64,000 bases of DNA from Asterias rubens (taxonomy: Eukaryota). The DNA is taken from contig NC_047082.1 of assembly GCF_902459465.1 (NCBI RefSeq), positions 1,922,001 to 1,986,000 on the forward strand. Direction: 5' to 3'. Positions 20,035-47,604 of this stretch are shown piece after piece (the stretch's first letter is position 1; every line of letters begins with the position of its first letter). The translations under genes and the position numbers were made by a program. The notes beneath the pieces were generated by a model. It did not search any database. It was not told where the DNA came from and worked only from the letters and a program-made list of their open reading frames with translations.

Positions 20035-20290
20035 GCGATTTTTTTTAGATAGTGCGTTTTAATGTTTAGGCTTAATTAATTGTATTTTTATAAGGTGTTT
20101 GAAAGACATGGAAAACATGGATTATTTTTAGATAGATTACTTTTAGATAGTGTATTTGAATGTTTAGGCTTAACTAATAGTACTATTAGGTGTTTGAAAG
20201 ACATGGAAAACATGGACTCTTTTTAGATAGATTATTTGTTAGATATTTAGTATTTTAACGTTTAGGCTTAATCAATAGTATTGTTGTAAG
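20035..20290. repeat. Degenerate ~90-100 bp tandem repeat, three copies
   Basis: TTTTAGATAG...TGTTTAGGCTTAA...GGTGTTTGAAAGACATGGAAAACATGGA recurs. Confidence 0.75.
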
Positions 20291-23810: not shown

Positions 23811-26800
23811 TTAATGCTTTGTGTTCAAAAACCTCCTTAGTCTCTCTACAAGAACATGGAAGTTTTGCTTAAAAAGTTTGTCGTTGCTGAGGTCAATGTG
23901 GTTTGTATGAGCCAGTAATTTCTTGATTGGAGATGGACCCATATCAGGCGGCCATGCCACAAAGCGTAGTAGAACAGCAATTACTGGCTTGTGTAGTGCT
24001 TCTGCCAACATCAAATCCTTCACTCCATTGTCTGACTGAAGATAACGTGGTGTAATGCAGCTCAAGACGATTGATGATGATTTCATATTACGTTGGATGT
24101 TACTCTCCAATGTCTCATGCATAGCATCGGAGTGAATCGGAGCAGTGGCATTACTGCGAGTACTTGCTCCTGAAGTGCCTCGTTGGTTCTGAGCGATTGT
24201 TGGGCTGTTGTCGATGTAGCACGAGATGCCGTTGCTTTCAAGGATGCGTTTGATCTCTTGTACCTTGTTCTGCATATCCCATTGGTAGCTCAGAAAAACC
24301 TTGGGTTGCTCGGATGAACCATTGCTCACTGTGGATCCTAATGCTGAAATTAATAAAAAATTAATAAAATAATTTTAAAGTGCATTCAACATATATTTCA
24401 TCCTGTGATCTAAATTGATGTATCTAGAAATATTGCCAAGCAAACAGAGGGCCAATTTCATAGTGCTGCTCGTCAGTAATTACACAACGATCATTGAAAA
24501 TTTATTGATAGTGTTGTTTTTCCTTGCATCTTGTTTTGAGTACACTTTAAGGACACTTGTAGCCCCCTTGATTGATTGATTATCCTATCACATCTTTTTC
24601 ATCCTCTCATAAGTTACTCACTTCAGGTCTTTTAGAGAGTCATAAACTAACAAACCAAGGAAATGTTTTCAAAGCCAGCAATTTATAACAAAAGTAACTA
24701 TAAAAGACATTGAATTGTGTTTTCTTTTATATCTTAAAAATTATTTCAGAGATGATGGAATAATCATCAAACACAACCATAACATTAGTAAGGAGATTGT
24801 GTCCTTCTCTTAGCAACATAACTACACTTTTTCAAATGTTGTTTTTCTTCTTCACAATCATGTACATTGCACGACACGCATTTACTTGTATGCACTAACC
24901 GTTCTATAGACTTTTCCATTAGCCAAGGTATGAGAAAAATAGCCAGTCTAATGGTAATTAGGTGCTGATCAAAGACTAATTAGCTGTATTGTACAACCAC
25001 TACATGCATAGCTTGAAATAAGAAGAACTCGTTACTACTCTCTATGTGGACTCAGCGTTGACAATGTCCGACATAGCAAACACTCATTAGAAACTTGTTA
25101 CAATTAAATCTATCAGGGACTTTCATTGTTGAGTTTGTTTTGTTTGATTTGGTTCAGGGGCTGCATTCATATGGTATCAAATACAAATAGGGCAGACTGA
25201 ATAGCTGTCAAACTGACCCCTGGGTGCAAAGACCACTTTAGTGAGGTATGTTAATTTCTACCTCCATGGTTAAACAGAATATGTTGTGTCCAAACAAACT
25301 CAGTGAGGATGAAAGATTTCAGGATTTGCATAGCGGGGGATCGATACTGTTTTTCCGTTTGCGATACAGTGGGCTTCGCAATGTAAATTGGCGCTGTTTA
25401 TTTAACGACATGAAATATATTCCATCGAGAATGACAGGTGTTTGGCTGTTTGTCATAACAGATCACTGAAACAGTGGTGTGTGGAGGGGCAGCGGAGAAG
25501 GGAAATAGTTTAAAACAAAAACAAAAAAATAAGAATTTGAGATTGTCGGAGGGGTGCGCTCTTGGTATGAGGATACAGAAAAAAGGTTCTCAGAGGGTCC
25601 ATGAATTACTATAATAATATGTGAACCAAACACAGAAATCCTTATAAATACCTTGAGATGCAGCTAAAACTTGAAGAGGTTTGAGTCCCTCGCTCATCCT
25701 GTTCAAGTAAGTTTGCTCCAAGACGACCCCGGCCACCTTCCGTAAGGGTTTGATTTGATGCTCAAGGATGTCCATGCTCTCACCATACATCTTAGTTTCA
25801 AAATCTATCGCCGGAAATTCACCTGATAGAGTAGGATGAAGAGAAAGAATTGTTTAGTTTGATTTTTTTTGCAGCACAGAAATGGAAACATTCAGTCAGT
25901 GACAAGTTTATTAGAGTCAAATTTTAGAGTCTAAATTTCTAAAGCTGAAGAGTACATTATGTATTTTAATATTATTTTGTCTCTAATTGTACTTTAGAGT
26001 CTAAGATTGTGTTTCTTCAATTTGAACTTCTTCTTGGAAATCTTGAAGTATTTGTTGCATAAAAAGCTATGCAAGACAAGTGAACAAGAAGATTGTTATT
26101 GCTTGAACAAGTTTTTTTAAGGATTCTTATGACGACCAAGAAAATGAAAACAAACGGTAATTAAAAAACTCAGAGAACACAACTTACCCAAAACAGATTT
26201 AAGTGATGGCCTCATCTTCTTCCAAACATTCTTAAACATGACAGTCACTAAGGACTTGCCAAGCCAATCAGCAAAGAGCACTTCATGGAAGATGAAGGGA
26301 GATGATGTCGCTGCATCAGTCAAGACAACGATGACATGTTTTGCCGAGGCGATGAGAGGACCATTGATTGACAGGAATTCGTCTTTTGATTGTCCAAGCT
26401 TTTCATGAGCTGTCACCTGTAAACATAAATCAACAAGAAATTCAACTTGATAAATAGATTAATAATTCAATAGTTTTTTCATGCACCACAGAAAATCCTG
26501 CACATAGTTTTGTTAACAAAATCACCAATACCTTTTTTGGGGGCTAAATGTCACTTTTTAAGTTGATCTCTCACAATATTCATACTTTGTAAGTAGCACC
26601 GGTTTTCGATAAATCCCGGTGCCTTTAATATTCTGAGTTTAATCTTAAAAGTATAAAATAACAACATTTTAAAACTCACTTGAAGATTTTTTCTTTTCAA
26701 ATCTTGCTTGAGGTTTTGTGCCAGTCTAACATCAGCAGGGTCATACACGACATACACACTCTCAGATCGGCTTTTCTGTGTCCTTGCTCGAAGGTGCCAA

Positions 26801-27849
26801 CTATCTGGTGCCTTATGCTCCTTCTCCAATATCCCAATAATCTGTTGAAGGATCTTCTTTCTGACAACACGGCTGTCAATGCCAAGAAAGTCTGCCATGT
26901 CTTGGTCCATAATGGACATAAGAAGAAAACCGTCCATGCCTGTCTCTGCAAAACTCTGACGGTAAAATTCTCTGATGCCAAGATGAAACAGCCAACTTTG
27001 AAGGTCATCTATACTCCACTTGCACAGTTTCTTCTTTTTGTACTCCTCTGTGAAGTTCATGTCTAGAGTCCGAGGAACATGTGGAGCAAAAATTGAAGCG
27101 TATAGTTCAACTCTCTCCACCAAAGCACCAATAACAACAGAGGCTTTCTCTGCAATACTGTATCTCTCATATTTCGCATAACACAGTGAGACAAGATCTT
27201 CAAAGAAGATGGCATACTGTCTTGGAATCTCTACATCTTCACACATGACAAGAAAGACTTTGGGTGGGTTTGCAGTGGTGGAGGGAACTTGCCTTTCAAG
27301 AAGGCAGCGAAGCTCATACAGCGATACAGGACATTGGAAGTAGCTGAAAGATAAAAAACAGATTGCAGCGCGACATTTTTCTACGGCTTCCATTCTCTGT
27401 GAAAACCAAGATGGACTGTCTGTAATTTCCTCATCTTTATCAAACCAAATGTCTTCTGTGAGATTGTTTTCCTTAAACTGTTTAACAGTTTCACACACAA
27501 GTTTTCTTTCAAGAAAACCTCCGTCGGGCGAGTAAGAGATAAATATCCCTTTCTTCATCTTCTTCATCTGATTACTTCCACCAATGTTTCCATTTTCTTG
27601 TTTCTTATTCTTAGTTCTGACTTTCTTTACAATTGGCTTTGGCAAAACTTCTTGACTTTTTGGTTGTGTCTCTCGAATTCCAGCTGGAGCATCTCCACCG
27701 CCCACCTGTCCTTGATTTAACTGACTGCTGTCATTTTGAACATCAGGGCGCTGCTCCTCTTTTCCTTCCGATAAAGGAGTATTTTTTGTTTCATCTCCTT
27801 GGCCTGCCATCTCCACATTGTTTTCTTTTCCCTCCTCACTATCGCCCAT
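23811..27849 (-). CDS. Uncharacterised TIR-SAM-TIR-TIR protein, 700 aa, spliced
   Basis: Exons 27849-26680, 26416-26188, 25822-25652 and 24343-23811; phases 0/1/1 match; 2103 nt; in-frame stop upstream of the ATG. TIR1 (IFISYS...IWFD...ICFLSFSYFQCPVSLYEL), SAM (WSIDDLQSWLFHLGI...Y...F....MDGFLL...LGI....VRKKILQQI), TIR2 (VYVVYD...VIVVLTDAATSSPFIFHEV) and TIR3 (VFLSYQWD...CYID...CITPRYLQSDNGVKDL). 5'UTR acceptor at 28084; putative non-coding first exon ending at 28615. Confidence 0.88.
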
Positions 27850-28263
27850 TATTTCTGTCTTTAGTTTTTGCTCAGTTCCTTGCTGTGATGTGGTACATTT
27901 TCAATTGATCGTCTTAATAACACAATTATTATGGGATCTCAGATTCATCAGATGTTTGTAGTCTTGTTGATTTTATTGATGCAATCTTGAACAATTCACT
28001 CTCCTGACTGACATATAGAAGAATCACCTCAGTGGAAACAATTATTCATGTTCCCAACTTAATCCAACATCCTGATAGCGATAGCTGTTGAGAAAAAATA
28101 TAGTCATAATATTCAATGAAATTGAAAAAACAAAATTACCCCATTGGAATCCCAAGGCTATATACAGTGTATACCCATATACCCCCACCCCCTCCCATGC
28201 TGGACTGTCCAGCGCCTTGTATTGCACTATATTTATGGTGCGATAATAAAATAAAAGGAAAAG

Positions 28264-40059: not shown

Positions 40060-47604
<7,545 letters not shown>

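What the first reader, a model, noticed from the sequence alone, without database searches (positions are those of the whole stretch)
23811..27849. TIR-SAM-TIR-TIR protein: a SARM1-like architecture without ARM repeats, candidate enzymatic immune or cell-death effector
Seen: a 700-aa protein with a disordered N-terminus, TIR1 (~aa 101-250), one SAM (~277-341), TIR2 (~364-490) and TIR3 (~537-700); no LRR, transmembrane, death or ARM domain is evident. Known: SARM1 uses SAM oligomerisation to activate TIR NADase activity; plant NLR TIRs and bacterial Thoeris ThsB TIRs use a conserved alpha-C glutamate to cleave NAD+ and make signals such as cyclic ADPR isomers; TLR adaptor TIRs are mostly scaffolds. 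Inference: a SAM-polymerising multi-TIR NADase or second-messenger synthase in an invertebrate, an architecture I cannot match to a named, characterised family.
Basis: partly seen in the sequence, partly recalled or inferred. Interest (0 to 1): 0.8.

Follow-up and report, generated by a model that had tools for sequence, protein, structure and literature searches.

The report
Starfish TIR-SAM-TIR-TIR signalling gene
This is a real, expressed starfish gene for a cytosolic protein with three TIR domains and one SARM1-like SAM domain; it belongs to an ancient, very conserved, functionally untested animal family that may be a second NAD-cleaving TIR enzyme lineage beside SARM1.

Summary
A four-exon, GT-AG gene on the minus strand (27849-23811) encodes exactly 700 aa. 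It is identical to NCBI 'uncharacterized protein LOC117304656 [Asterias rubens]', and RNA contigs and reads show all three splice joints. Pfam, profile searches and AlphaFold/VIA-align confirm TIR1 (about 101-250), SAM (278-337), TIR2 (361-493) and TIR3 (536-697). There is no ARM, Death, LRR or membrane segment.

The SAM is specifically SARM1-SAM1-like. TIR3 aligns its Asp633 with the catalytic Glu642 of SARM1. TIR1 keeps Glu179 in every aligned sequence that covers the site. TIR2 is the most conserved domain and has F431-x3-E435.

The family is not starfish-specific or invertebrate-only. Orthologues are usually one per listed species, at 40-65% identity, from Nematostella to molluscs, annelids, amphioxus and tunicates. 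Relict copies exist in shark, reedfish, paddlefish, lungfish and a salamander, and there the TIR2 Glu is replaced by Gln or Leu.

NAD-cleaving activity is plausible but untested (about 0.45). A non-enzymatic scaffold role is the main rival. Surveys have lumped such proteins under 'TIR-SAM', 'SARM-like' or ecTIR-DC, so I rate it a new variant of a known kind. The scan previously followed up a different TIR gene of this genome (ecTIR-DC family 6), not this one.

The parts
26680..27849 (-). Coding exon 1 (aa 1-390): disordered Lys-rich N-terminus, TIR1, SAM and the start of TIR2. The ATG is at 27849-27847.
   Evidence: The donor is GTGAGT. RNA joint 26416|26680. The 5' UTR runs on to at least 28085 and then joins an upstream exon (loose ends).
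26188..26416 (-). Coding exon 2 (aa 391-466 plus the first base of codon 467): BB-loop region, strand C and helix C of TIR2.
   Evidence: AG acceptor and GTAAGT donor. Joints seen in RNA.
25652..25822 (-). Coding exon 3 (aa 467-523 plus the first base of codon 524): end of TIR2 and a conserved helical extension.
   Evidence: AG acceptor and GTATTT donor. Joints seen in RNA.
23811..24343 (-). Coding exon 4 (aa 524-700 and the TAA stop): linker and TIR3.
   Evidence: Joint 24343|25652 seen in RNA.
27565..27849 (-). Disordered N-terminal region (aa 1-95), with basic runs at aa 75-83 and 95-100.
   Evidence: pLDDT 33-37. Composition. Poorly conserved in alignment A1.
27100..27549 (-). TIR1 (aa 101-250). 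The Glu179 codon GAG is at 27313-27315. Val175 lies four residues upstream.
   Evidence: Pfam TIR_2 28.9 bits. Profile hits to TLR2 and MyD88 TIRs, with E179 on the TLR2 Glu. pLDDT above 90 with TIR strand-helix order. E179 present in 27/27 sequences.
26839..27018 (-). SAM domain (aa 278-337), SARM1-SAM1-like.
   Evidence: Pfam SAM_2 9.4e-07. The family profile hits SARM1 SAM1 at 5e-12 and C. elegans TIR-1 at 3e-11, while the next non-SARM SAM is at 4e-4.
25743..26769 (-). TIR2 (aa 361-493, spread over exons 1-3 with two introns). The Glu435 codon GAA is at 26282-26284. Phe431 lies four residues upstream.
   Evidence: Pfam TIR_2 28.2 bits. Model pLDDT 87. Foldseek and VIA-align match Hydra TRR-2, SARM1, MyD88 and ThsB TIRs at Z 13-14. 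It is the most conserved domain, with 76% mean column identity.
23823..24308 (-). TIR3 (aa 536-697). The Asp633 codon GAT is at 24015-24017. Asn629 lies four residues upstream.
   Evidence: Pfam TIR_2 8e-13. VIA-align Z 16-17 to SPARTA, Hydra TRR-2, SARM1 and plant TIRs. D633 aligns with SARM1 E642.
24120..24206 (-). Disordered Ser/Thr-rich insert at the BB-loop position of TIR3 (aa 570-598), with the conserved motif R-G-x-S-S-x-S-x-R. Candidate phospho-regulated loop (inference).
   Evidence: pLDDT 32-40. S581, S584 and R586 are at least 90% conserved. The nearest paralogous TIRs have a short Q-M-G-G-G-D loop here.

Best explanation
This gene is the Asterias rubens orthologue of an ancient animal family of cytosolic TIR-SAM-TIR-TIR proteins related to SARM1, usually one copy per listed species.

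Most likely mechanism (inferred, not shown):
- The SARM1-type SAM domain oligomerises the protein.
- Oligomerisation brings TIR domains into the head-to-tail (BE-interface) contacts that build a TIR active site across two domains.
- A glutamate-bearing TIR then cleaves NAD+ or a related nucleotide, depleting it or making an ADP-ribose-type signal.

Roles of the three TIRs (inferred):
- TIR2 is the best candidate for a cyclising activity. It has F431-x3-E435, is the most conserved domain, and its strand-C and BB-loop motifs resemble SARM1.
- TIR1 (V175-x3-E179) has the Glu kept in every aligned sequence that covers it, vertebrate relicts included.
- TIR3 (N629-x3-D633, with its BB loop replaced by a Ser-rich disordered insert) most likely acts as a non-catalytic or weakly catalytic partner and regulatory module, possibly switched by phosphorylation. 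It would take the autoinhibitory role that the ARM domain has in SARM1.

Shown here: the gene, its splicing and expression, the four domains, the SARM1 affinity of the SAM and TIR3, the residue conservation and the taxonomic spread.

Inferred: oligomerisation, catalysis, the division of labour among the TIRs, and any immune, neuronal or cell-death role.
For: Gene and transcript.

Domains.

SAM closest to SARM1 SAM1 (5e-12) and TIR-1.

TIR3 against SARM1 TIR:
- The F-I-S-Y strand A and the K-[DE]-...-I-[IV]-P-...-W-P block align, placing D633 on E642.
- TIR-1 aligns its D-D-N-C...K-E-L with the family's S-D-N-C-x-K-D-L.

Profile-profile alignments put E179, E435 and D633 in one column.

Conservation:
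- E179 is present in 27/27 sequences, E435 in 26/26, F431 in 26/26 and D633 in 25/26.
- All three are kept in Nematostella.
- Mean column identity is TIR2 76%, TIR1 65% and TIR3 51%.
- Identity across phyla is 40-65% with one protein per listed species. That indicates strong purifying selection typical of a core enzyme or signalling hub, not of a fast-evolving receptor.

Published rules (Manik et al. preprint, doi 10.1101/2022.05.07.491051, read):
- The Glu is essential, and Glu-to-Asp lowers but does not abolish AbTir activity.
- An aromatic residue four positions upstream is found in all cyclic-product TIRs.
- The active site is built by two TIRs through the BE interface.

The full-length model has pTM 0.64 despite about 135 disordered residues, which suggests packed domains.
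Against: - No activity data exist for any family member.
- A Glu at this position also occurs in TLR2, a receptor TIR, so the Glu alone is weak evidence (alignment).
- TIR1 lacks the aromatic residue and TIR3 lacks both signature residues.
- All four vertebrate orthologues that cover TIR2 have Gln or Leu in place of E435 yet keep open reading frames. Whatever function persists there does not need that Glu.
- By sequence, TIR2 finds no solved TIR at all.
- SARM1 uses a tandem SAM to build its octamer, and here there is one SAM, so the oligomer type is unknown.
- The similarities between TIR2 and the SARM1/TIR-1 strand-C and BB-loop motifs were read by eye from fragments printed. They were not scored.
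Confidence: 0.45

Rival explanations
1. It is a non-enzymatic scaffold or adaptor. The three TIRs act as docking surfaces for other TIR proteins (Toll-like or IL-1R-like receptors, MyD88, the Death-TIR-TIR family). The SAM multimerises the platform. The conserved acidic residues are structural.
For: TIR1's best sequence matches are receptor and adaptor TIRs (TLR2 1.4e-3, MyD88 6e-3). The Glu column is also Glu in TLR2. Vertebrate orthologues lose E435 but persist. TIR3 lacks the W-x3-E signature. Surveys propose adaptor or regulator roles for conserved invertebrate TIR proteins (PMC6321704).
Against: E179, E435, F431 and D633 stay unchanged across more than 25 invertebrate lineages and a cnidarian. 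That is tighter than expected for a purely structural helix-C residue. The protein's only non-TIR domain is most like the SAM of the one proven animal TIR enzyme. Adaptors in expanded invertebrate immune repertoires are usually multi-copy and fast-evolving, whereas this family shows one protein per listed species at 40-65% identity across phyla.
Confidence: 0.33
2. It is a SARM1 partner or regulator. Through its SARM1-SAM1-like SAM it co-assembles with SARM1 rings. It would add extra TIRs that promote or poison SARM1 TIR assembly, a dominant-negative or co-activator paralogue.
For: The SAM profile matches SARM1 SAM1 at 5e-12, eight orders of magnitude better than any non-SARM SAM. TIR3 is SARM1-TIR-like but has Asp for Glu. 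The family profile also matches C. elegans TIR-1.
Against: About 30% identity in the SAM does not show that the interface residues are kept. This was not tested. The presence of a canonical SARM1 in the starfish was not checked here. Such a role would not explain the extreme conservation of TIR2.
Confidence: 0.12
3. It is a TIR enzyme acting on another substrate, for example 2',3'-cyclic nucleotide production from RNA or DNA, or NADP+ base exchange, rather than NAD+ hydrolysis.
For: The TIR fold also matches nucleoside 2-deoxyribosyltransferases at Z 10-12.5. The Manik preprint notes a plant TIR bound to DNA with 2',3'-cAMP at the Trp position. The basic N-terminal runs could bind nucleic acid.
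Against: No direct evidence. The deoxyribosyltransferase resemblance is generic to TIR and flavodoxin-like folds.
Confidence: 0.07

Closest known systems
SARM1 / C. elegans TIR-1 / Drosophila dSarm (ARM-SAM-SAM-TIR NAD+ hydrolases)
   Same: Both are cytosolic SAM plus TIR proteins. The SAM is most similar to SARM1 SAM1. TIR3 aligns with the SARM1 and TIR-1 TIR, including strand A (F-I-S-Y) and the helix-C/strand-D block, with the acidic residue on E642. Structural Z is 14-17. Top whole-protein Foldseek hits are SARM1.
   Different: There is no ARM domain, one SAM instead of two, and three TIRs instead of one, with one TIR lying N-terminal to the SAM. TIR3 has Asn...Asp instead of Trp...Glu and a long disordered insert at the BB loop. 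Whole-protein TM is only 0.16-0.19.
ARM - Death - TIR - TIR proteins of invertebrates
   Same: Their TIRs are the closest non-family relatives of TIR3, at 30-35% identity. They share the F-I-S-Y-Q-W, C-W-x-D, C-[IV]-T-x-K-Y and S-x-N-C motifs and the W-P-P motif.
   Different: They carry a Death domain and helical repeats and no SAM. At the D633 column they keep Glu (S-A-N-C-R-R-E), and they have a short Q-M-G-G-G-D BB loop.
Bacterial and plant enzymatic TIRs (SPARTA TIR-APAZ, ThsB, AbTir, RUN1/RPP1)
   Same: Same fold at Z 12-17, with an acidic residue at the catalytic helix-C position. TIR2 has an aromatic residue four positions upstream, as in TIRs that make cyclic products.
   Different: Sequence similarity is below family thresholds (ThsB_TIR 13 bits against a 21.2 cut-off; weak PADLOC hits cover strand A only). 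There is no partner effector context, because this is a eukaryotic gene.
MyD88 / TLR TIR adaptors and receptors
   Same: TIR1's best sequence matches are TLR2 and MyD88 TIRs. The fold is the same.
   Different: There is no Death domain, LRR ectodomain or membrane segment. E-values are only 1e-3 to 1e-2.

Membership tests
TIR domain superfamily (Pfam TIR_2 / TIR) | Flavodoxin-like five-stranded beta-alpha fold recognised by the Pfam model at its gathering score | tested here: met
   There are three TIR_2 stretches, 93.6 bits in total. Alone, TIR1 scores 28.9, TIR2 28.2 and TIR3 49.4 bits against a cut-off of 28. Structural Z is 16-17 for TIR3 and 13-14 for TIR2.
SARM1 family | N-terminal ARM repeat autoinhibitory domain that senses NMN and NAD+ | tested here: not met
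   No ARM or HEAT Pfam match. Residues 1-95 are disordered and TIR1 follows directly.
SARM1 family | Tandem SAM1-SAM2 that forms the octameric ring | tested here: not met
   There is a single SAM at 278-337. The SARM1 SAM2 region aligns only as a second, insignificant match to the same SAM.
SARM1 family | SAM sequence of the SARM1 type | tested here: met
   The family profile scores 5e-12 against SARM1 SAM1 and 3e-11 against TIR-1. The next best, liprin-beta, scores 4e-4.
SARM1 family | C-terminal TIR with the catalytic Glu in a W-x3-E motif | tested here: not met
   TIR3 has N629 and D633 at these positions. TIR2 has F431 and E435, a partial match.
SARM1 family | NAD+ glycohydrolase / cyclase activity | not testable with these tools
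   A biochemical assay is needed.
Evolutionarily conserved cytosolic TIR-domain-containing proteins (ecTIR-DC, Gerdol et al. 2017) | Intracellular TIR protein with a fixed domain architecture conserved across several metazoan phyla | tested here: met
   The same TIR-SAM-TIR-TIR layout occurs in echinoderms, a hemichordate, amphioxus, tunicates, molluscs, annelids, a nemertean, a bryozoan and a cnidarian.
Evolutionarily conserved cytosolic TIR-domain-containing proteins (ecTIR-DC, Gerdol et al. 2017) | Assignment to a specific numbered ecTIR-DC family | not testable with these tools
   The defining paper is not held in the library. Papers that cite it name only families 6, 11, 13 and 14.
Evolutionarily conserved cytosolic TIR-domain-containing proteins (ecTIR-DC, Gerdol et al. 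2017) | Absence from vertebrates (stated for many ecTIR-DC families in PMC6321704 and PMC8662601) | tested here: not met
   Orthologues at 42-53% identity occur in Pleurodeles, Erpetoichthys, Polyodon, Protopterus and Scyliorhinus.
Thoeris ThsB | Match to ThsB_TIR or PADLOC ThsB models at threshold | tested here: not met
   ThsB_TIR scores 13.2 bits against a cut-off of 21.2. PADLOC ThsB models score E 0.005-0.04 over strand A only.
MyD88-type adaptor | Death domain N-terminal to the TIR | tested here: not met
   No Death domain in Pfam.

The most novel reading that the evidence does not exclude
The family is a second, ancient animal TIR enzyme lineage, a sister of SARM1 dating from before the cnidarian-bilaterian split. 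In this reading an intramolecular pair of TIRs (catalytic TIR2 with helper TIR3) forms a composite active site. SAM oligomerisation and phosphorylation of the Ser-rich TIR3 loop gate it, and the product is a cyclic ADP-ribose-type messenger. Vertebrates first lost the TIR2 glutamate, and amniotes and teleosts then lost the gene.
Probability: 0.2. Interest if true: 0.8.

Novelty: new variant of a known kind. Interest (0 to 1): 0.55.

Why it matters
SARM1 is the only animal TIR protein with established NAD-cleaving activity I know of, and it drives axon degeneration. A second family would show that animal TIR enzymology is broader than one gene if it proved active. This family shares SARM1's SAM type, carries glutamate-bearing TIRs, and has stayed 40-65% identical from sea anemone to amphioxus. 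It would also give tractable models (sea urchin, starfish, Ciona, Nematostella, oyster) for TIR-derived nucleotide signalling in animals.

The natural replacement of the TIR2 glutamate in the surviving vertebrate copies is a ready-made comparative experiment. Even if the protein is only a scaffold, two points correct existing annotations. The family persists in shark, ray-finned 'basal' fishes, lungfish and a salamander, which revises the published view that vertebrate TIR proteins are limited to TLRs, IL-1Rs and five adaptors. And databases mislabel several members as 'NAD(+) hydrolase SARM1'.

Tried and rejected
- Sequence searches of TIR2 against solved structures, by profile and by single sequence, found no TIR. 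The amphioxus TIR3 alone found nothing. Fold comparison was therefore needed for TIR2.
- Whole-protein Foldseek gave SARM1 first, but at TM below 0.2 and mixed with unrelated Rossmann-like multi-domain proteins. It is useful only as a pointer.
- PADLOC and NCBIfam gave nothing at threshold.
- tblastn of the protein against the window found no second copy or pseudogene. No tandem repeats of note flank the gene.
- Literature: the Gerdol 2017 ecTIR-DC paper is not held. Searches for 'three TIR domains', TIR-SAM, SARM-like, and NADase with invertebrate or oyster terms found no functional study of this family.
- I could not obtain a full SARM1 sequence as a tool reference. Residue-level comparison therefore rests on the fragments printed, and no TIR phylogeny with SARM1 as an explicit member was built.
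- Rejected readings: receptor (no signal peptide or membrane segment), MyD88-like (no Death domain), Thoeris-like (below threshold), and lineage-specific immune expansion (one protein per listed species and highly conserved).
Full report
**1. Is it there?**

The region lies in AT-rich (about 36% GC) eukaryotic DNA with short exons. On the minus strand, four open stretches join through canonical GT..AG introns: 27849-26680, 26416-26188, 25822-25652 and 24343-23811. The joined CDS is 2103 nt, which is 700 codons plus TAA.

The product is identical, residue for residue, to database protein P0001, 'uncharacterized protein LOC117304656 [Asterias rubens]'.

Public RNA data confirm it. Two transcriptome assemblies carry single contigs that skip exactly the three introns. 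Raw RNA-seq reads of the same species cover only the exons and show the same joints. Depth is low (a few reads per position in 1.9 Gb), so the gene is transcribed at a modest level in those samples. The transcript continues upstream of 28085 into another (5' UTR) exon. tblastn of the protein against the window finds no second copy.

**2. Domains**

- **Pfam.** Pfam finds three TIR_2 stretches and one SAM (278-337) in the starfish protein. It finds the same layout in the amphioxus, acorn-worm, scallop and Ciona orthologues.
- **Full-length model.** The AlphaFold model built on 27 orthologues has pLDDT above 90 over all four domains and pTM 0.64. Residues 1-95, 525-534 and 570-598 are disordered.
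- **TIR3 (536-697).** It superposes on solved TIR domains at Z 16-17: SPARTA TIR-APAZ, Hydra TRR-2, human SARM1, and plant RPV1 and RUN1.
- **TIR2.** By sequence it is only just above the Pfam cut-off and finds no solved structure. I therefore modelled it alone (pLDDT 87). Foldseek, and an independent VIA-align scan of 48,161 chains, both return TIR domains first: TRR-2 14.2, SARM1 14.1, IL-1RAcPb 13.6, MyD88 13.3 and ThsB 12.9. These cover residues 360-493. A conserved helical extension (494-524) follows.
- **TIR1.** It has the TIR strand-helix order at high confidence, reaches the Pfam cut-off, and its profile hits TLR2 and MyD88 TIRs.
- **Nothing else.** There is no ARM, Death, LRR or other family. 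No window is hydrophobic enough for a membrane segment outside TIR core strands.

**3. What family is it?**

The first database search returned 131 relatives. Orthologues with the same length and layout occur in:
- other starfish, sea urchins and crinoids;
- Saccoglossus, amphioxus, Ciona and Styela;
- many molluscs and annelids, a nemertean and a bryozoan.

They show 50-84% identity over TIR1-SAM, usually as one protein per listed species.

An exhaustive HMMER scan of 1.8 billion representatives, plus name look-ups, adds Nematostella (720 aa, 42% identity) and a lungfish fragment. Using the lungfish protein as query finds orthologues in the salamander Pleurodeles, the reedfish Erpetoichthys (646 aa) and the paddlefish. 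Two shark fragments together cover the whole protein. An AlphaFold DB cluster representative of 692 aa, at 25% identity, superposes over the full length with TM 0.58.

The family therefore predates the cnidarian-bilaterian split and survives in several early-branching vertebrate lineages. No arthropod, nematode, teleost or amniote member appeared in these lists, but I did not test absence systematically.

This contradicts the general statement that such conserved TIR proteins are absent from vertebrates (PMC6321704; PMC8662601).

In the literature I could read, the architecture appears only in passing. It is a 'TIR-SAM combination' gene model in amphioxus (PMC2575513), and TIR+SAM genes are counted as 'SARM' in Aplysia (PMC9334734). 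UniRef names several members 'NAD(+) hydrolase SARM1' or 'ADP-ribosyl cyclase', which are automatic labels. I found no functional study. The paper that defines the ecTIR-DC families is not held, so I cannot say which number, if any, this family carries.

**4. Relation to SARM1**

A profile of the whole family hits solved SARM1 SAM1-SAM2 constructs at 5e-12 and C. elegans TIR-1 at 3e-11, through the SAM. The next SAM, liprin-beta, is at 4e-4. The SAM is therefore specifically of the SARM1-SAM1 type.

The TIR3 profile aligns weakly but coherently with the SARM1 TIR. Strand A (F-I-S-Y) matches. The helix-C/strand-D block K-D-L...K-P-I-I-P...W-P lies against SARM1's K-E-I...K-N-I-V-P...W-P. This puts Asp633 on catalytic Glu642. 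TIR-1's D-D-N-C...K-E-L aligns with the family's S-D-N-C-x-K-D-L.

The closest relatives of TIR3 outside the family are the TIRs of invertebrate ARM-Death-TIR-TIR proteins. That architecture is described as ecTIR-DC family 6 (PMC6836662), and its starfish copy was followed up earlier in this scan (s1-150100). Those TIRs have Glu where TIR3 has Asp, and a short Q-M-G-G-G-D BB loop where TIR3 has a 30-residue disordered Ser/Thr-rich insert. That insert carries a conserved R-G-x-S-S-x-S-x-R motif.

TIR3 is thus a derived TIR of the SARM1 / Death-TIR-TIR kind. It has changed its catalytic acid and its assembly loop, and both changes are fixed across the family.

**5. The three candidate active sites**

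Profile-profile alignments place E179, E435 and D633 in the same helix-C column.

| Domain | Residue four upstream | Acidic residue | Acidic residue conserved in |
|---|---|---|---|
| TIR1 | Val175 | Glu179 | 27/27 |
| TIR2 | Phe431 | Glu435 | 26/26 |
| TIR3 | Asn629 | Asp633 | 25/26 |

Nematostella keeps all three acidic residues.

The published rules come from the Manik et al. preprint, read:
- The Glu is essential.
- Glu-to-Asp reduces AbTir activity.
- An aromatic residue four positions upstream is present in every TIR that makes a cyclic ADPR product, and it stacks on the substrate in SARM1.
- The active site is completed by a second TIR through the BE interface.

By these rules TIR2 is the best candidate for a SARM1-like, possibly cyclising, site. 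It is also the most conserved part of the protein (76% mean column identity, against 65% for TIR1 and 51% for TIR3). TIR1 could at most be a hydrolase type. TIR3 looks like a helper or regulator.

By eye, TIR2's A-K-H-V-I-V-V-L-T strand C and H-E-K-L after strand B resemble the TIR-1 and SARM1 fragments printed (A-K-H-F-I-L-V-L-T and V-E-K-L). This is an unscored observation.

One finding cuts both ways. In all four vertebrate sequences that cover TIR2, the E435 position is Gln or Leu, while E179 and D633 are kept. Either E435 is catalytic and vertebrates hold a decaying or repurposed pseudo-enzyme, which would fit their lower identity and later gene loss. Or the core function never needed it.

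**6. Most likely mechanism and rivals**

I favour, at about 0.45, a SAM-oligomerised TIR enzyme in which tandem TIRs supply each other's BE-interface partner, with TIR3 and its Ser-rich loop in the regulatory role that ARM plays in SARM1.

- The main rival (about 0.33) is a purely scaffolding adaptor. Its support is the TLR/MyD88-like TIR1, the Glu also seen in TLR2, and the vertebrate E435 loss.
- A SARM1-partner role through SAM co-assembly (about 0.12) remains possible.
- An alternative substrate (about 0.07) also remains possible.

Nothing here bears on immune induction or cell death.

**7. Novelty and verdict**

The gene is annotated but unnamed. The architecture has been glimpsed in surveys and mislabelled as SARM1. 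No member has been studied. Relative to SARM1 it is a distinct, ancient variant.

- the domain-by-domain assessment of the catalytic signature;
- the derived state of TIR3, with its conserved Ser-rich loop;
- the vertebrate relict copies with a substituted TIR2 glutamate.

I rate interest 0.55 and novelty as a new variant of a known kind.

Noticed in passing
window 23810/23811: Some RNA reads and one transcriptome contig carry a 3-base insertion (TTA on the plus strand, TAA on the gene strand) directly after the stop codon. This is an indel polymorphism in the 3' UTR with no effect on the protein.
   Followed up: no
window 28025-28085 and beyond: Transcript contigs leave the genome at 28085 with a consistent loose end. 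At least one further 5' UTR exon therefore lies upstream of the region given.
   Followed up: no
window 44712-45182 (+): An open stretch matches Pfam squalene epoxidase (SE) at 1.3e-25. This is an exon of the SQLE gene that first-stage notes place nearby.
   Followed up: no
P0191 (Bryopsis sp., 673 aa): A green-alga protein with two TIR_2 stretches and two SAM domains matches TIR1-SAM of the starfish protein at 30% identity (E 5e-23). The Atlas feature search also returned a Chlorophyta cluster. It could reflect convergent shuffling, old shared ancestry or contamination.
   Followed up: partly
P0106 (688 aa, MetaClust record without an organism name; its closest listed relatives are Biomphalaria proteins) in alignment A1: This gene model carries a TIR3-like segment at its N-terminus and lacks it at the C-terminus. 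That suggests a mis-assembled or circularly mis-joined prediction rather than a real permutation.
   Followed up: no
window 20043-20281: A 98-bp tandem repeat of 2.4 copies lies in the intergenic DNA downstream of the gene.
   Followed up: no
P0098, P0118, P0076, P0097 database names: [quoted passage not shown] This is propagated automatic annotation.
   Followed up: partly
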